DNA of 63,990 nt, counting the filler, from Hyphochytrium catenoides (taxonomy: Eukaryota > Protista > Hyphochytriomycota): assembly GCA_900088475.1 (NCBI GenBank). It is 14 parts of 14 records of this genome, joined end to end, with 100 filler letters (N's around TTAATTAATTAA, not from the genome) between each part and the next. Parts side by side here need not be neighbours in the genome. Positions count along the whole stretch, not along the records: positions 62,891 to 63,990 come from FLMG01004201.1; 13 more parts are not named here. One strand, given 5' to 3'. Shown piece by piece: positions 1 to 63,990 of the stretch. The translations under genes and the position numbers were made by a program. How positions within the stretch are numbered: position 1 is the stretch's first letter; every line of letters begins with the position of its first letter. The notes under the pieces were generated by a model. The model saw nothing but the letters and a program-made list of their open reading frames with translations. It made no database searches and was not told where the DNA came from.

Positions 1-2848
1 CGACTCGTATACAAAGTATATGAAAGGAGTCGTCAGAGAGAAGCAAAAGAACCAGAGAAAGGGGCTCAGAGTGGCCTTCAGGTGAGAGAGGGAGAGCGAA
101 GAGCACTGATTGGATCGGAAGAGAGAAAGAGTCCGCAGAAGGAGAAGGAGAGAAAGACACAGAGGGAGAGAGAAAACGATAAGAGCAAATTGCGTTTATC
201 CGGTCTCTCTAACCAACCCTCTCCCACTCCTTTTGTCTCTTCCCTTTCGTTCCTTGCTCGCTCACTCTTGTTGCTCTTCTGCGCGTCTCCTCCTCTCCCC
301 TCTCTCTTATTTTCTCTCTTCTCTCTTCATCCTTTGACATCTCTGTCTACAGACTCCTCGCAGGAGAAGGGCGAGACTCGCTCACCGTCTACGACTGTTG
401 GGACTTCTTTGCGGAGATGGGGAAGAACTATAACTTCTCTCACGTGTCTCGTGACACTGTGGAGCTTGTCTTCAAGGCGCTGGACGATAATGGAGATGAG
501 CAAGTGGCTTTCAATGAGTTCCGAGACCTTGTGGATGTGCTGCACTATCGCTTCAACAGAATAGAGAAGAGAAGCTTCGTAGAGGTGAGCGGCGGAGAAG
601 CCCGTTTGAGGGAGTAGAGGAGGCAAGTGGGCAAGTGGGCGAAGGAATGTTGTTGCTTGTGATGACACAAAGAGAAGAGAGAGAGAGCGCGAGGTAGAGA
701 GTGAAAGAGGCTAAGGAGAGATGAGCCGAGGAACGAGAGCGAGTAAGAAAGGGCGATATAGGAGGGGAAGTACATACAACATACAAGAAGTGAGGCAGCA
801 AAGGAACGGCTTTGCTGAGTAACGAATCCCTCCCTCTCTCTCTCTCTCCCTTTTCTCTCTCTCTCTCTCTCTCCCTCTCTCTGTCTCACTCCCTCTCTCT
901 CTCTCTCTTTCTCTCCCTCTTCCTCTCTCTCTCTTTTTCTCTTTCTCTCTTCCTCTCTCGTTTCTCTCTCTCTCTCCGCATGGGCTTTAGAGAAACTTCC
1001 CGACGGTCTTCCACTCTCCGTGGTATCAACAAGTGGCAGTTTTCGTCAAGTCTAAATGGTTCGACAGGATCGTGGTAAGCTTTTCCCTCTTTCTGCTGAG
1101 TATCTTTTCCTGTCTCCTCGTGGGTCGTGGAGGTTCTTCATTCTCCACCTGCACACGAGAAGTATCTCCACTTCCTTGCGTTACGCTGTCTTTTCTCTCG
1201 ACATTTTGTCTCTTTCAGTCCGTCCCTTCTCCACTCCTCGCGGGACCCCTCCGGATCTGGCTTTCTCTCTCTCTCTCTCTTTCACAATCTCCCTCTCTTT
1301 CTCTCTCTCTCTCTTTCTCTCTTCTCTTTCCTTTTCTCTTCTTCAATGGCCTATCTTGGGGTAACCTTCTCTTGCATTATTCTCCTTTCTGGACCGTCCT
1401 CTGCATATCCTCCGCACTTAAAATGCTCTCGTTGTCTCTCTGTCTCTCTCTCTCCGTCATGATGCGCACAGGACGTGGTGCTAGTCCTGAATGCTCTCTT
1501 CGTTGTCTACGAGACACACTTGGACTTGGACGGCAAGGAGATGAAGCCGCCGAAGGAAGCGGAGGAAGAAGCTTTCAAGCAGGGCGTCACGGTTCTCTTC
1601 GCCGTCTTTTACTTCGTGGAGATGGCGCTGAAGCTGCTGGTCCACTCCTGGGACACCTACTGGTCAAGGAAGCAGCATCGGTGAGCAGGAGGACAAGCCT
1701 TATACGTCTCTTCCTCTCTCTCTCTCTCTCCCTTCATTCCTAAATCACATTTCTTCCAACCCTTATTCCCCTATAACTGCTATCTCTGTCACTCTCTCTC
1801 TCTTTAATCATTTTTCTTACCTTCTGCCTCTCTGATTCCCGCTTCCTCAGTTCATAATTTCTGTTTCTTTCCTCCCTTTTTTCAACTGTTTCTACTCTCT
1901 TCTACCTGTCCGTCTCTTCTCTTTCCGTGTCTCTTCCACTGTCTGTCTGTCTCCCTCGTACGTCTGCCCGGATTGTTCTCGCTGTAAGGCCAATTCTCAG
2001 CTCCTGGAGCTCTGCTGTCTCTTTCACCCTGAATCCAAACGTGACTCTAGTCTATTGACTTTCATTTTGTCTTTGGGCTTTGGCATCACCGCTGACTCTC
2101 ACTCTCTCTCTCTCTCTCTCTTGCACCCCGTCTCTCTCTCTCTTCCTACAGCGTGGACTTCCTTGCTACGTGGATTATTATCGTGGCCTGCGCCTTGATG
2201 ACGTTTGGACCTAACGGCCTTCCCTTTGAGATTCTCCGCTACTGCGTGATCGTCAGGCTTCTCCGTCTTCTTGCGATCCTGGCGGCGGTGGACAGGCTGC
2301 ACACTCTGACTGTTCTCTTCAAGATGATGCCCGCCTCTGTTCCTTACTTCACCATGCTCTTTCTCTCTCTCTACGTCTTCGCAGCGGGCGGTGTGCAGCT
2401 GTTTGGAGGGCTAATCTATGAAGGAATGTCGAGAGAAGACTCGAGAGTGAAGGAGTACTTTGACTATGAGTATCAGAACATCAACTTCAACGACATGACC
2501 GGAGCCATTGTGACGGTGTACCAGCTCTCTCTCTTAGGCTATTTCAGCGAGGTAGCCGACGCTTTCTCCGCTGTCACGTCCAACTATGCGCGCCTCTACT
2601 TCACGCTGTACTATGTCGTAGAGTACCTCGTCCTTGTCAACTTATTGGTAGCGTTTGTCATCGATGTGTTTCTGCACATCGTCACGGAGATGAAGAAAGA
2701 AGGCCAGCGATCGGACGAGGAGGAGGAGATGGAGCGGCGGTATGAAGGACTGGATGTGGACTGCGATAGGCGGCGCTGGTCGGACACGCGAGTGATTGAG
2801 AAGATGTTCCTCACCATTACCAATCTTGATGATGAAGGAGACGAGTAG
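1..2848 (+). CDS. TPC1: Two-pore cation channel, plant TPC1-like with EF-hand linker (5'-partial)
   Basis: GT-AG exons 1-81, 353-584, 991-1074, 1472-1680 and 2152-2848 splice in frame: DSYTKYMK..VAFRLL..LVFKALDDNGDEQVAFNEFRDL (EF-hand)..FVKSKWF..YETHLD..FYFVEMALKL..RVDFLATWII..LRYCVIVRLLRLL..GVQLFGGL..INFNDMTGAIVTVYQL..NLLVAFVIDVF. This is colinear with the linker and domain II of Arabidopsis TPC1. Confidence 0.93.
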
Positions 2849-3541
2849 AGAGAGAGAAAGTTAGGGCAAGAAAGCTGAGAGAGAGAGAGAGAGGAAGCCT
2901 CAAGTGCAGGGTGGAGAACGAGAGTAAGAGCGCTAGACATGCTCTTGAATGTAAAGCGAGTTTATTCAATGTACAGGCTTCCGCTCCACTCCGGACTTTT
3001 CTCCCTCTCTCTTTCTCTCTCTCTTTCTTTCTCTCTCACACTCTCTTTCTCGTATGTCTCTTCCCTAGTGGTTCTTCTCCTCTTTCCCTATCTCTCTCGC
3101 TAACGCTCTCCGTAGGGTTCTTTGTCCCTTTCGCTTACCGTTCGCTTCCCTTCCTCCTTGCCTGTCTTCCTTCCTCTTCGTCTTCTCTCACCGTCCCGAC
3201 TCTACCTCTATCGCATCTTTCCGCTCCTTCGTAGCCCAATCACGTCCTCGCAGGGAAGGGGTCCTGTCTTCTCTCCCCCGTCTTCCCTAGCTCAGTCCTT
3301 GCGCTGCCCATCCTCCTCTCTCTGTTCTGGGATCCTGCCTTGCTCGTCAGAGAGCCATCAGGAGACGTGTAGGAGGAACGAGGACCTCTTCCTCTCTCTC
3401 GCTTTTCTTCTCCTTATTGAGCAGGACATTCGGTCTTTTCCTTTTTTGGGGGGCTTTGTCTGGGTTCTTTGTAGGGAGGAGAGACCTCTCCTATAAATAT
3501 ATATAAGTGTGTGTGAATGGGGGAGAGTTTGTCTGCTGATC

Positions 3542-4578
3542 CTAGATCCGAAAGCAAGCGTTATCGATGTGATCCAGGGAAAACCTGCTTGCCACCTGCA
3601 CAGAGAGAAGAGGGAAAAAATAAAGAGGAGAGAGAGAGATGAGATGGAGAGAGAGTATTTGGAGAAGGTGGTGGGAATATGAGCGCATTGAAGAAAAGAC
3701 TTTTGACTCAACGGGAGGAGGAGGGGAGATGGCACCCAAAGCAGTCAGCAGCTCATGAAAGGAGTTATCAGCTTCTCAAGAGGAACGAAGAGGGAAGGCT
3801 GACAAATCCTCAACCTGTTGAAGGACGCGCTTCTTCCTTCCGCTGGTAGCGTTGTCACAGGCAAGGTCATAGAGGGTGCAGAGGTTGAACACCAGCATCT
3901 CCTGAAGGTGCTTGCGCGGGTCCCTCCGGATTGCGTCCTGTACGGGCCGACAAAAAGCATTGACGGGTGAGAGAGAGAGGCAGAGAGGGGGAAACAAGAA
4001 GAGAAAGCAGTACAAGGCCTTGCGCAAATTATGCCTTCTCTCTTTCTTTTTCTCTCACTCTCTCTCACTCTCCCACTTCCCTCTTGTCGTCTTCTCCCAG
4101 AAAACGAACGTAGTACCTACCTCAAGGGTAGCGACGGCTCTCTTAACGTCGCAACAATAGAGCGAGCAGATGGCAAAATTGTTGGCCGCGGCGCTCATCA
4201 GCTCCACGTCCACGGTAGAACCCGTGAAAAGATCGCTCTCAGCCGCGCTGGAGGGGATCCCGCGGTAAGGAAGATTATGAACGGAAAGAGGAAGAAGATG
4301 AGAGACAACTACGAAGTCAGTGATCGAGAGATGACGAGAGAAAAAGAAGGTCAAAGGGGAGAGAGGGTGTCATGGTACAGAAGACAAGGATTGCAACAGA
4401 GGGAGAGAGAGGGAGATAAGGGGAGAGATATAATGGGATTCCGCGAAATAGGCGAGAGGAGAGAGGGAGGAGAAAAGGTTGGAAAAGAAAGAGAGCGAGA
4501 GTATAAAAACTAGAGTTAGACTGCGGCTCACATGAGGTTATTGAATGTATACTCGAAGCATTCGAGCGCCGTACGGAA
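3542..4578 (-). CDS. TRAPPC12: Trafficking protein particle complex subunit 12 (TTC15), C-terminal exons
   Basis: Exons 4578-4532, 4247-4121, 3937-3815 and 3595-3542 give FRTALECFEYTF..ANNFAICSLYCCDVKRAVATLEDAIRRDPRKHLQEMLVFNLCTLYDL..RKKRVLQQVASRFSLDHIDNACFRI*. This matches the TRAPPC12 C-terminal TPR (NNxAxCxLY..LE..DP..E.xxFNLxTxYxL). Confidence 0.88.
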
Positions 4579-7615: not shown

Positions 7616-8184
7616 TCTCTCTCTCGCTCTTTCTCTTTCTTTGATTTAGCACTTCTCCTATCTTGGGATTGATATCCTGGACCTCGAGACCTCGAACATT
7701 CTTCGCCACTTTGAAGAAGCTCTCAACTTTATCGAAAAAGGAAGAGAAGAGAAAGAGCCAGTGCTGGTACGGTCGGGGGAGGGAGAAGAGAGAGAATCAA
7801 GCGTTCGCAGAACGATAGCGTAAAGAAAGATACACAGAGAGGGGGCGTGTCTTTAGGGAGAGAGAGGAGAGACAGACAGACAGACAGACATGGAGCGAAG
7901 AGAGTGAGAAATAGAAGAGAGGAAATGACAGAGCTATGGAAGAAAGAGTAGATTCAAGTACAAGTAGAAGTCGAAGTAGCTCCCTCTATTTCTCTCTCTC
8001 TCTCTCTTTCTCACTCTCTCGGTTCTCTTCTTCTTTCTCCTCTCGCACTCATCTATCGTTGACTGGCTGTCTTCTGCCTTGCCCCTTTCTCTCTTGTCAT
8101 CGCCATCTCAGGTTCATTGCGTCTACGGACAGTCGCGCAGCGCCACCATCTGTGCAGGTGAGTGAGATAAGAAACATTTCTTCT

Positions 8185-8223
<39 letters not shown>

Positions 8224-8419
8224 CCTTGCGGCACTCTGTCTCCCTCTCCTTTACTAATCTCCCTCCTACGTAGTCGCATCTCCCTCGCTTGGGTCTCTCC
8301 TCGTGCCTTGCGACTCTTCTCTTGCTTTATTTTATGTTCCTCTACTATTGGTCTTATCTCTTTGCACTTTCTCCTTGTCAAGGCCTTATAATCATCCCTC
8401 CCTCTGCCAGGACTGACCG

Positions 8420-8457
<38 letters not shown>

Positions 8458-8961
8458 CGCTCGCTCTCTCTCTCTCTCCTCTCTCGCTCTCCCTCTCTCG
8501 CTCTTCTCTCTGCCTCTCTCTCTCTCTCCTCTCTCTGTCTCTCCCTTCCTCTCTCCCTCTATTTCCGTCTTGTTGTTATCCCTCTTTGCTAGCATTTCTG
8601 ATGCGTTCTCAGCGTTTCTCTTTCCTGCAGGCGTATGAGCTGTTGCACTCGGCGAGACCCTGTCTCCACATAAACAAAGGATTTGTTGAGCAGCTCCGGG
8701 TGTGGCGCCTTTACTCTCTCTGTCTTGCGCTCTCTTTCTTCTTTTTCCTTATGGCTTGGTCTCACGCAGTGTCTCTTTCTTCTCTCCCTTTGCCTTTCTC
8801 TGTTTCTTATCTCCAACTCTTCCTTCGATTTCTCTCTCTTTCGCCTCAGTCGACGTCTCTATCGTCTATCGCGATGCGAACCCCTTCTTACACGGATGAT
8901 TCCCTTCCTCTCTTATTGCTCTCTCCCTCCTCTTTCTTCCTCTCTCTTTCTTCTTCTCTCC

Positions 8962-8992
<31 letters not shown>

Positions 8993-9402
8993 CCTCCCTC
9001 TCTCCCTCCTCGCTCTCGCTCTGTCTCTCTCTCTCACTCTCTCTCTCTCTCTCTCGCACTCACTCTTTCCCTTCCGCGGGCTCTCTTCCTCTCTCTCCCT
9101 CTACTAGTTCTTCCAGGCCTTTCCCTTCCATAATCCTCAATCCCGTCTTAACGCTCTTCTCTGTCTCCCTCCCAGCTGTTTGACTCTATGGGCTGTAATA
9201 TCTCGGGTGATTCTCCTGCCCACGCAAGATTTCGCCTTCTTCAGCTCCTTAGCGGTCGGGGAGACACTGGAAAGATTCCTCTCGCCGTTTCTACTCTTTC
9301 TCTCCCTTCTCTCTCTCCCTCTCCGACTGTTCTCTCCTGCTCTCTCTCTGTCTCTCCTCCTTTGCGGTCCCTGGCGTATCACTGTGGAAAATGCCGCTTC
9401 CT
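6963..9402 (+). CDS. DUSP12: Dual-specificity phosphatase, DUSP12/Yvh1-like (3'-partial)
   Basis: Exons 6963-7055, 7246-7317, 7650-7766, 8112-8157, 8593-8699 and 9176-9402. Motifs: LYIGS, general-acid Asp in ILDLETSN, catalytic VHCVYGQSRS, INKGFVEQLRLFDSMG, then YHCGKCRF, the start of the Yvh1-type zinc-binding domain, cut by the contig end. Confidence 0.88.
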
Positions 9403-62700: not shown

Positions 62701-63254
62701 TCAGAGTGCCGCTACTACTAATCATTTTCATTAATGGATTGTCCCCTTAGACCACAGTCCCATTCCTTACATTTGGTAGCTTTGCACGCGNNNNNNNNNN
62801 NNNNNNNNNNNNNNNNNNNNNNNNNNNNNNNNNNTTAATTAATTAANNNNNNNNNNNNNNNNNNNNNNNNNNNNNNNNNNNNNNNNNNNNGGAGAACTAG
62901 CAGCAGCGTCAGTGGTGGCTCGAGAAAGGGGAAGAGATGAAAGAGAGGACAAAGAAGAAGAGAGAGCAGAGGAAGCGTGGAAAGCAGCAAGAAAGGGAGC
63001 AGAAGGGGCCAACCGGGATAGATTTTTTGACGTTAATGTGGCCTTTATTACTAGAAAAAATTAAGGAGTGACTAGTAGACTACTGTTTTTAAAAGAGGAA
63101 GAGAGATATGAAATATGCACTACTCAAACGAAGAGAAACAAGAGAGACAAGTAGTAGGCCAGAAGGACAGGGAGGAGAAAAAGGAAAGAAGCATGAGGGA
63201 GCTCACCCGGCCACTTTTTTATGTCGCTCATTTTATATATACTCCTACTAACGC

Positions 63255-63716
63255 TACTAACAGACTAATCCTATAAGAAGAAGAAAGAGAAAAAGAAGAA
63301 GAGGAAAGAGAAGAGAAGAAAAGCTAAGAAGCCTTAGGCTCTTCCATCATCTCAGCTCGACCTGCTCCCTGCTCATCATCAGTAAATGAAGAATCATAGT
63401 TGATTTCCTCAGTAATGATGAGCGGAGAAGAAGGAGGAGGAGGAGGTAACCATCAGCAACCATGTCATCATCATCAACCAAGGCATCACCAGCAACCAAC
63501 ATGTCAACACCGGCGAGCTCAGCCGTCGCGAGAAGACAAGCAAGAGAAGGGTCCAGCTGTTCAGGAGGAACGCGCTTCAAAATTTGAAGTGCATTTTCTT
63601 CGTGAATGGCCAAAGACACTCGCGTGTGAAGGCGTAAGCCCATAGCTAAGCGAGACCAAGGGCCAAGATGCCGAGAACCATCAAGGGCGGAGCGGTCACA
63701 TTGAAGCTTCACCAGG
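63255..63716 (-). mobile_element. Second, diverged 5'-truncated copy of the same CRE-like family
   Basis: VKLQCDRSALDGSRHLGPWSRLAMGLRLHTRVSLAIHEENALQILKRVPPEQLDPSLAC aligns with copy 1 VKLQCDRAALEASRSLGHWSRLAKFLTLHTRISFAAIHERNA..QQLDPALAC. Confidence 0.8.
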
Positions 63717-63990
63717 TACTAACAGACTAATTCTAGAAGAAGAAGAAAGAGAAGAACAAGAAGAGGAAGAAGAAGAAAAGAAAAACTAAGAAGCCTTTTA
63801 GGCTCTTCCAGCATCCCAGCTCGAACCTGCTCCCTGCTCATCATCAGTAAAAGAAGAATCAGAGTTGATTTTTTTCTTTTTTGGTTGGGTTCTCTTCTTT
63901 GTTACTTAGCAAACTAGTCTAGGAGAAGAAGAAAGTGAAGAAGAAGAAGAGAAAGAGAAGAAAAGCTAAGAAGCCAACTAATCTAGGAGA
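63717..63990 (-). mobile_element. Further tandem 3'-terminal fragments of the same element
   Basis: 63717-63871 repeats 63255-63406 (tactaacagactaat..ctaagaagcc..ggctcttcca..cctgctccctgctcatcatcagtaaa.gaagaatca.agttgattt). Shorter repeats of the terminus start at 63912 and 63976. Confidence 0.7.

What the first reader, a model, noticed from the sequence alone, without database searches (positions are those of the whole stretch)
63255..63990. Head-to-tail stack of 5'-truncated CRE-like retrotransposon ends
Seen: the RLE-homologous reading frame breaks at 63716 and is directly abutted by a new copy of the element's own terminus (tactaacagactaat at 63255 and 63717). The terminus restarts at 63912 and 63976, always in the same orientation, with segments of ~460, ~155 and ~64 bp. 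Established: nested or tandem arrays of truncated non-LTR elements mark chromosome landmarks (Cnl1 at Cryptococcus telomeres, MoTeR in Magnaporthe, Zepp in Chlorella, HeT-A/TART in Drosophila). Inference: a self- or site-targeting family building a subtelomeric or centromeric array in this protist, possibly an undescribed chromosome-end system.
Basis: partly seen in the sequence, partly recalled or inferred. Interest (0 to 1): 0.75.

Follow-up and report, generated by a model that had tools for sequence, protein, structure and literature searches.

The report
Pile-up of truncated retrotransposon tail ends
This 1.1-kb piece is made entirely of six broken-off tail ends from two related R2-type jumping genes, stacked nose to tail in one direction; this pattern is known from other organisms, and nothing here shows that it marks a chromosome end.

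Summary
All coding sense is on the minus strand. Read 63990 to 62891, the piece holds four 5'-truncated 3' ends of one element (E2: 15 bp cut by the edge, about 104 bp, 155 bp and about 500 bp). Two 5'-truncated 3' ends of a second, related element (E1: 193 bp, then at least 130 bp) follow, all in one orientation.

A 15-kb Logan contig (L001) carries both elements. E1 has an RVT_1 reverse transcriptase followed by a CCHC plus PD-(D/E)XK-like domain. A profile of that domain hits the C-terminal endonuclease domain of solved R2 proteins (E 6e-6). The piece's 123-codon frame is the last part of that domain, so "RLE-homologous" holds.

"CRE-like" is not shown. The motif spacing differs, no spliced-leader target is present, and no tree could be built.

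Copies A and B are 92% alike, and each is closer to L001's copy, so they are separate retro-copies and not LTRs or a local duplication. L001 holds a second, independent stack. L001 and L002 also hold solo copies in unrelated DNA.

No telomere repeats were seen. The likely cause is TPRT starting in a resident copy's 3' end or tail, or serial template jumps. The chromosome-landmark idea remains untested.

The parts
63976..63990 (-). Unit D: the last visible 15 bp of an E2 3' UTR, cut off by the piece's edge. It ends about 9 bases short of where A and B end.
   Evidence: 13/14 match to L001 8953-8967. 89% match to the equivalent part of unit C, 64 bp away (family D8). It shares unit C's variant base.
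63907..63975 (-). Unit C body: E2 3' end, 5'-truncated at the stop-codon region (equals L001 8901-8973). A diverged subfamily.
   Evidence: 63/69 identity to L001; 77-80% to A, B and L001 in the multiple alignment.
63872..63906 (-). Terminal bases and A-rich tail of unit C (inferred). The boundary with unit B is ambiguous within a 3-base A run.
   Evidence: Sequence. It sits where the A-rich tails of the three full E2 ends sit. It has no match elsewhere in L001 or L002.
63717..63871 (-). Unit B: E2 3' end, 155 bp (equals L001 8827-8975): the last codons, the stop and the CT-rich UTR. It lacks the last ~10 conserved bases and the tail.
   Evidence: 142/147 to L001; 95.3% to L001 against 92.1% to A.
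63255..63716 (-). Unit A body: E2 3' end, 462 bp (equals L001 8519-8975). It holds the C-terminal part of the RLE-domain ORF, an acidic and proline-rich tail, the stop and the CT-rich UTR.
   Evidence: 91-93% to L001 8518-9018. P0001 on L001 is 89% identical to the ORF.
63350..63718 (-). Open frame of 123 codons within unit A. The first ~90 codons are the end of the RLE domain. A 1-base deletion relative to L001 near 63445 shifts the true frame, which continues as 63452-63327.
   Evidence: Frames; comparison with L001 8740-8910. The profile alignment to R2 chain residues 990-1162 covers this segment. No Pfam family matches.
63451..63499 (-). 18-bp (6-codon) tandem repeat inside the E2 ORF tail, 2.7 copies. 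Part of the element, not of the stacking.
   Evidence: TRF (piece; L001 8733-8781).
63216..63254 (-). Terminal extension of unit A (about 10 bases conserved in all three full E2 ends) plus a variable A-rich tail.
   Evidence: Three-way alignment of the piece, L001 and L002 ends; sequence.
63023..63215 (-). Unit E1a: 3' end of the second element E1 (equals L001 3486-3679): the last 3 codons, the stop and the 3' UTR, ending in a short A run.
   Evidence: 187/189 aligned bases identical to L001; 94% with gaps.
62891..63022 (-). Unit E1b: E1 ORF tail, 5'-truncated at about L001 3210-3212 and cut off by the piece's edge at L001 3341.
   Evidence: 129/130 to L001. tblastn places E1 ORF residues 651-693 at 95%.

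Best explanation
The piece is a pile-up of dead, 5'-truncated 3' ends from two related non-LTR retrotransposon families. Both are of the R2-type architecture: reverse transcriptase, then a CCHC knuckle, then a restriction-like endonuclease (RLE). There are four E2 units and two E1 units, all sense on the minus strand. Each unit's 3' end, with or without its A-rich tail, is joined directly to the truncated 5' start of the next unit. Shown: the identity of the units, their order and orientation, their truncation points, and that A and B are separate copies. Inferred: the stack arose through target-primed reverse transcription (TPRT) coupled to existing copies. One route is repeated insertion into the last bases or A-rich tail of a resident copy, which places each newcomer immediately 3' of the resident, as in Zepp-like clusters. 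The other is one or a few events in which the reverse transcriptase jumped from the 5' end of one element RNA to the 3' end of another, giving multi-part chimeras. I cannot separate these two routes with 1.1 kb. Both give the same geometry, and neither requires a chromosome end.
For: blastn maps the whole piece onto two places of contig L001. The L001 E1 ORF has RVT_1 at 4.7e-12 and its nearest solved protein is R2Bm at 2.3e-5. It is followed by a CCHC...RHN...E...RPGD...D motif. E2's C-terminal region is 37-44% identical to E1's. The domain profile hits the R2 RLE domain at E 6e-6 over chain residues 990-1162. A-B identity (92.1%) is lower than A-L001 (94.6%) and B-L001 (95.3%), so they are independent copies. 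Three of the five junctions in the piece carry an A-rich tail. An independent stack exists in L001: an E1-like tail and UTR at about 850-1192 abuts a 5'-truncated E1 at 1204. All six junctions have the same orientation and none shows the interrupted element resuming. Template jumping by R2 RT and multi-part chimeras from LINE template switches are documented (PMC8857657; PMC2104539).
Against: Units B and D lack the last ~10-19 bases and the tail, which simple end-to-end jumping or tail insertion does not predict without extra assumptions such as 3'-degraded RNA or homology-primed in-register insertion. No target-site duplication could be examined because both ends of the stack lie beyond the piece. 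The D/C pair could equally be a 64-bp tandem duplication inside one copy. The junctions are unsupported by reads: this is a short, all-repeat contig.
Confidence: 0.68

Rival explanations
1. Chromosome-landmark array. E1 and E2 would target chromosome ends, or their own copies at ends or centromeres, and build orientation-locked arrays there, as Cnl1, MoTeR/FoTeR, Giardia GilM/GilT or HeT-A/TART do. The 5' truncations could then reflect terminal erosion.
For: The geometry (same orientation, variable 5' truncation, two families mixed) is that of such arrays. RLE-type elements that form subtelomeric arrays are known (for FoTeR, MoTeR and Cnl1; for Cnl1 arrays of 5-80 kb). Stacking recurs in L001. 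Repeat arrays typically assemble into short contigs like this piece.
Against: No telomere-type repeat occurs in the piece, L001 or L002. L001 and L002 hold solo E1 and E2 ends in unrelated DNA, one 300 bp from a 722-codon membrane-protein ORF. Two of five junctions have 3'-truncated units, which terminal addition does not predict. Chromosomal position cannot be read from these contigs.
Confidence: 0.14
2. Assembly artefact. A short-read assembler joined different truncated copies through shared repeats, so the stack does not exist as such in the genome.
For: The contig is 1.1 kb and all repeat, with low-complexity CT/AG tracts that invite mis-joins. No reads are available.
Against: The junctions B/A, A/E1a, E1a/E1b and C/B do not lie inside sequence shared by the joined units, so a k-mer collapse would not create them. 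An equivalent junction is present in an independently assembled contig from another sample (L001).
Confidence: 0.1
3. Local DNA-level events, such as unequal crossing-over, replication slippage or tandem duplication, within one or two resident copies, rather than separate retrotransposition events.
For: The D/C pair is compatible with a 64-bp tandem duplication in one 3' UTR (family D8). Low-complexity tracts favour slippage.
Against: A and B are each closer to a copy in another sample than to each other. B is preceded by C's tail and not by the E2 sequence that a duplication of A would require. Two different families take part.
Confidence: 0.06
4. An LTR element. The two 152-bp repeats would be LTRs flanking a short internal region.
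For: Two direct repeats of about 152 bp lie 462 bp apart.
Against: In L001 the 'internal' 310 bp and one 'LTR' form one continuous ORF tail, stop and UTR downstream of an RLE domain, with no second repeat. The repeat recurs a third and fourth time in the piece. The repeats are only 92% alike.
Confidence: 0.01

Closest known systems
R2 and the other RLE-bearing non-LTR retrotransposon clades (R2, R4, NeSL/Utopia, HERO, CRE; reviewed in PMC4640811)
   Same: A single large ORF with RT followed by a CCHC motif and a PD-(D/E)XK-type endonuclease at the C-terminus. Frequent 5' truncation and no LTRs. R2 proteins are the nearest solved structures for both the RT and the RLE domain.
   Different: Sequence similarity to R2 is remote (E 1e-5 range). 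The catalytic loop reads RPGD or NPGD rather than R/KPD. No 28S, snRNA, spliced-leader or microsatellite target is evident. Flanks differ between copies, which resembles the largely non-specific HERO clade as described in PMC4640811. The clade was not determined.
   Same: RT plus CCHC plus RLE architecture, with an A-rich 3' end.
   Different: The published REL pattern (quoted in PMC12857005) gives C-X1-3-C-X7-8-H-X3-4-C-X9-10-RHD/N...R/KPD-X12-14-D/E. E1 has X10, X8, RPGD and X15. E2 has X9, X10 (second RH of its RHRH run; X8 from the first), RHV at that RH (RHR at the first), NPGD and X15. No spliced-leader gene flanks any copy.
Cnl1 (Cryptococcus), MoTeR (Magnaporthe) and FoTeR (Fusarium) telomere-associated RLE elements
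   Same: RLE-type elements forming arrays in which truncated copies outnumber full ones.
   Different: Those elements sit in or next to telomere repeats, and repeat tracts separate the copies. Here no telomere repeats are seen, and solo copies lie in ordinary DNA.
Zepp clusters of Chlorella (from my own knowledge; not read here)
   Same: Successive 5'-truncated LINE-like copies, each inserted into the tail region of the previous one, giving same-orientation nested stacks.
   Different: As far as I recall, Zepp is a poly(A)-type element that is not of the RLE type, and its clusters are associated with chromosome ends or centromeres. Neither point could be checked here.
Chimeric retro-copies from LINE RT template switching (PMC2104539) and R2 RT template jumping (PMC8857657)
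   Same: Directly fused, same-orientation copies of different RNAs. Bi- and tripartite cases are documented, and R2 RT performs serial end-to-end jumps in vitro.
   Different: Published genomic chimeras have two or three parts and are bounded by one target-site duplication. Here there are six parts and the outer boundaries are not visible.

Membership tests
RLE-bearing non-LTR retrotransposons (R2-type architecture) | Reverse transcriptase domain in the element's ORF | tested here: met
   Met for E1 on L001: RVT_1 at 4.7e-12 and R2Bm 8gh6 at 2.3e-5. For E2 only 5'-truncated copies were found, so its RT was not seen. E2's C-terminal third is 37-44% identical to E1's.
RLE-bearing non-LTR retrotransposons (R2-type architecture) | C-terminal CCHC motif plus a PD-(D/E)XK-type endonuclease | tested here: met
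   C, C, H, C, RH, E, P-x-D and D columns are invariant or at least 90% conserved in 34 sequences. The profile hits the R2 RLE domain (9nl3_A, 9dou_A) at E 6e-6. Motifs were located in E1 and E2. The piece itself holds only the part downstream of the catalytic motifs.
RLE-bearing non-LTR retrotransposons (R2-type architecture) | Variable 5' truncation with a common 3' end and no terminal repeats | tested here: met
   Units start at L001 positions 8901, 8827 and 8519 (E2) and 3486 and 3210 (E1), and share 3' ends. L002 holds a 145-bp solo end.
RLE-bearing non-LTR retrotransposons (R2-type architecture) | Target-site duplication or other TPRT footprint at insertion sites | tested here: inconclusive
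   The only solo copy with both flanks (L002 1413-1560) shows at most a 5-base repeat, which is within chance. The ends of the stack lie outside the piece.
CRE clade (CRE1/2, SLACS, CZAR) | Insertion into spliced-leader RNA genes | tested here: not met
   Rfam finds no RNA gene in the piece, L001 or L002. The 3' flanks of the copies are unrelated to one another.
CRE clade (CRE1/2, SLACS, CZAR) | REL motif spacing as published (quoted in PMC12857005) | tested here: not met
   The general order of motifs is kept, but three spacers and the R/KPD motif fall outside the stated ranges.
CRE clade (CRE1/2, SLACS, CZAR) | RT groups with CRE references in a phylogeny | not testable with these tools
   No reference sequences for CRE, NeSL, R4, HERO or Dualen could be obtained by reference. 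Only R2 proteins are in the PDB set.
Telomere- or landmark-associated retrotransposon arrays (Cnl1, MoTeR/FoTeR, GilM/GilT, HeT-A/TART, Zepp) | Same-orientation head-to-tail arrays of variably 5'-truncated copies | tested here: met
   Six units in the piece, and one more junction in L001.
Telomere- or landmark-associated retrotransposon arrays (Cnl1, MoTeR/FoTeR, GilM/GilT, HeT-A/TART, Zepp) | Adjacency to telomere repeats or confinement to chromosome ends or centromeres | tested here: inconclusive
   No telomere-type repeats in 20 kb of available sequence. Solo copies lie beside ORFs. Chromosomal position is unknown for every contig.
LTR retrotransposon | Two LTRs bounding an internal coding region, with a target-site duplication | tested here: not met
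   The repeat is the ORF end plus the UTR of a non-LTR element. L001 has it once, contiguous with the RLE domain.

The most novel reading that the evidence does not exclude
E1 and E2 are two cooperating RLE-type retrotransposon families that build orientation-locked, mixed arrays at chromosome ends or centromeres of a barely sampled eukaryote. That would be an RLE-retrotransposon chromosome-landmark system outside fungi and Giardia, with occasional escape to interstitial sites.
Probability: 0.12. Interest if true: 0.6.

Novelty: new member of a known kind. Interest (0 to 1): 0.3.

Why it matters
As it stands, the piece shows two unnamed families of R2-type retrotransposons in an organism almost absent from public data. 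Its own genes find no relatives among 5.8 billion proteins. The piece also gives a clean six-unit example of 3'-end stacking, whose junctions bear on how RLE-type reverse transcriptases start and stop copying: tail insertion versus template jumping. It would matter more if a long-read assembly showed the stacks to be confined to chromosome ends or centromeres. With the present evidence that is only a possibility.

Tried and rejected
1. Pfam and PDB searches of the piece's own ORFs found nothing significant. Homology became visible only through L001 and a domain profile.
2. Rfam found no RNA family in the piece (sub-threshold chance hits only) or in L001 and L002.
3. A scan of JGI metagenome contigs with the E2 tail protein found no relatives.
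4. Organism identification failed. Run accessions are not in the literature held; the one hit was an unrelated Aspergillus study. The protein atlas had no usable hit for the 722-aa ORF. The GNAT gene of L001 found only itself.
5. The HMMER search of representatives with the E2 RLE region found 1737 relatives, but no full-length E2. The best hits were fragments at 61% and 52% identity.
6. The spliced-leader idea was set aside. From memory, a 10-base string next to unit A's end resembles the start of the trypanosomatid mini-exon. L001 and L002 differ at that string, the rest of a mini-exon is absent, and no SL RNA model hits. I treat it as coincidence.
7. The LTR reading was rejected.

Full report
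**Scope**

Only window 62891-63990 (1100 bp) is genomic sequence, and everything below refers to it. The piece is purine-rich on the plus strand (A 412, G 285). All meaningful coding sense turned out to be on the minus strand.

**1. The observation**

- The repeats 63255-63406 and 63717-63871 are 92.1% identical, 140/152 with 3 gap columns (searches agree).
- Shorter, more diverged restarts lie at about 63908/63912 and 63972/63976, 64 bp apart (family D8).
- The minus-strand frame 63718-63350 (123 codons) is closed by a stop immediately upstream, exactly at the junction with the next repeat copy.
- The coordinates and segment lengths (462, 155 and 64 bp) are correct and far beyond chance. The 15-bp unit at the edge is the only weak one.

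**2. What the units are**

The piece's ORFs have no Pfam or PDB match of their own. A word search with the 123-aa frame found two proteins from Logan assemblies: P0001 at 89% identity and P0002 at 83%. Their contigs are L001 (15,071 bp, SRR28521206) and L002 (3,792 bp, SRR28521197).

blastn and local alignment map the whole piece onto two separate places of L001. Reading the minus strand from 63990 to 62891:

| Unit | Piece coordinates | L001 match | Note |
|---|---|---|---|
| D | 63990-63976 | 8953-8967 | cut by the edge |
| C | 63975-63907 | 8901-8973 | 63/69; followed by an A-rich stretch, 63906-63872 |
| B | 63871-63717 | 8827-8975 | 142/147 |
| A | 63716-63216 | 8519-9017 | 461/495 |
| E1a | 63215-63023 | 3486-3679 | 187/189 aligned bases |
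| E1b | 63020-62891 | 3212-3341 | 129/130; cut by the edge |

I call the element at L001 ~7630-9017 'E2' and the one at L001 1204-3679 'E1'.

**3. Family of E1 and E2**

- **E1 reverse transcriptase.** The L001 E1 ORF (1261-3498, 745 codons) has an RVT_1 domain (4.7e-12). Its nearest solved protein is the Bombyx R2 protein (8gh6_A, 2.3e-5).
- **E1 endonuclease motif.** Downstream lies a CCHC knuckle and the pattern C-X2-C-X10-H-X3-C-X8-RHN-X19-E-X11-RPGD-X15-D.
- **E2 is related to E1.** E2 on L001 is itself 5'-truncated and carries a frameshift. Its translated sequence is 44% and 37% identical to E1 residues 372-557 and 556-657, and it carries the same motif series.
- **The domain family is large.** A HMMER search of 1.84 billion representatives with the E2 region found 1737 relatives at E <= 0.001, many inside 900-1300-aa RT proteins. 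The E1 ORF has 429 relatives in the word search at 31-43% identity among the listed full-coverage hits, including sponge (Ephydatia) proteins.
- **The domain matches the R2 endonuclease.** A 34-sequence alignment of this domain shows invariant C, C, G, H, H and near-invariant D, C, R, E, P, D, D columns. Its profile hits the C-terminal endonuclease domain of solved R2 proteins (9nl3_A and 9dou_A, E 6e-6 and 9e-6), with profile positions 80-263 against chain residues 990-1162.
That alignment runs through the segment the piece encodes. The piece's frame is therefore the last part of an RLE domain, followed by an acidic and proline-rich tail, the stop and a CT-rich UTR. "RLE-homologous reading frame" is correct.

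Unit A is a dead copy. Relative to L001 it has a 1-base deletion that shifts the frame near 63445, and another that moves the stop.

"CRE-like" is not established:
- The REL pattern published for SLACS/CRE (quoted in PMC12857005) has spacers X7-8, X9-10 and X12-14 and an R/KPD motif. E1 and E2 have X10/X9, X8/X10 (E2 counted from the second RH of its RHRH run, as), X15, and RPGD/NPGD.
- No spliced-leader or other RNA gene is present.
- According to PMC4640811, RLE elements fall into the CRE, R2, R4, NeSL and HERO clades (plus Dualen), of which HERO is largely non-specific. I could not obtain reference sequences to build the tree, so the clade is open.

**4. The true 3' end**

- Unit C appears to have such a tail (63906-63872).
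- Units B and D stop 10 and about 19 bases short and have no tail.
- E1 ends in a short A run, both in L001 and in E1a.

**5. Independent copies, not LTRs or a duplication**

- A and B are 92.1% alike, but A-L001 is 94.6% and B-L001 is 95.3%.
- B is preceded by C's tail and not by the E2 sequence that a duplication of A would require.
- In L001 the 'internal' 310 bp and a single copy of the repeat form one continuous ORF end and UTR.
Only the D/C pair could equally be a 64-bp tandem duplication.

**6. Recurrence and dispersal**

- **A second stack.** L001 holds a second, independent stack. An E1-like ORF tail and UTR at about 850-1192 (77% identical to L001 3581-3669) is followed at 1204 by the 5'-truncated E1 RT ORF.
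- **Solo copies also exist.** The same contigs show solo copies:
  - The E1 end at L001 3679 runs into unrelated DNA, with a 722-codon multi-pass membrane ORF starting 300 bp further on.
  - The E2 end at about L001 9017 also runs into unrelated DNA.
  - L002 holds a 145-bp E2 end (1413-1560) in unrelated flanks.
  - These flanks share nothing with one another.
- **What this means.** The families are not strictly site-specific. End-to-start stacking still occurs far more often than random insertion would give: one of the four 3' junctions outside the piece, and all six junctions in the same orientation.

**7. Mechanism**

Three routes give this geometry:
- (a) Insertion into the last bases or A-rich tail of a resident copy, which puts each newcomer just 3' of it.
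- (b) Serial template jumps of the RT within one TPRT event. R2 RT does this in vitro (PMC8857657), and bi- and tripartite LINE chimeras exist in genomes (PMC2104539).
- (c) Terminal addition at eroding chromosome ends.

Three of the five junctions carry a tail and two do not. The tail-less junctions fit (a) if priming was in register on the homologous 3' end, or (b) if the acceptor RNAs were 3'-degraded. They fit (c) least well. I favour (a) or (b) jointly at about 0.68, and (c) or another landmark system at about 0.14. The remaining weight goes to an assembly artefact (about 0.10) and DNA-level rearrangement (about 0.06).

**8. Landmark claim**

- No telomere-type repeats are present in the piece, L001 or L002.
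- No contig can be placed on a chromosome.
- The organism could not be identified.
- Known RLE-type array builders such as Cnl1, MoTeR and FoTeR sit in or beside telomere repeat tracts.
- The claim is therefore neither supported nor excluded. The solo copies count mildly against an exclusive landmark system.

**9. Verdict**

This is a real and neat structure. It is a new, unnamed pair of families of a known kind, showing a known behaviour. Interest is moderate to low unless genome-wide mapping shows confinement to chromosome landmarks.

Noticed in passing
L001:3987-6155 (+): An uninterrupted 722-codon ORF predicted to be a multi-pass membrane protein, lying between the E1 and E2 copies. It has no Pfam family and no usable atlas hit, and its function is unknown. 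It may be a host gene of a poorly sampled lineage.
   Followed up: partly
L001:1-55: The first 55 bases form a near-perfect palindrome (98% self-complementary). This is most likely an assembly or library artefact at the contig end.
   Followed up: no
window 63451-63499 and L001:8721-8781: An 18-bp (6-codon) tandem repeat in the acidic tail of the E2 ORF differs in sequence and register between the piece and L001. It is a small coding minisatellite inside the element.
   Followed up: no
L001:14460-15017 (+): A GNAT acetyltransferase ORF (Pfam 4.6e-14) finds only itself among 5.8 billion proteins in the word search. This shows how poorly sampled the organism is.
   Followed up: partly
L002:3045-3792, L005:396-1435: Two further E2-like subfamilies (74% and 71% nucleotide identity to L001's E2) occur in other runs of the same SRA series. 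This family is therefore diversified in the organism or its close relatives.
   Followed up: partly
window 63243-63258 (+): From memory only, a 10-base string at the E2 end resembles the first bases of the trypanosomatid spliced leader. The L001 and L002 copies differ there and nothing else of a mini-exon is present, so I judge it a coincidence.
   Followed up: partly
L003/L004 (P0124, 589 aa): The nearest longer relative of the E2 endonuclease region (52% identity) comes from an environmental metagenome (ENA ERZ19570841, also in Logan ERR11523708). Related elements therefore exist in uncultured eukaryotes.
   Followed up: no
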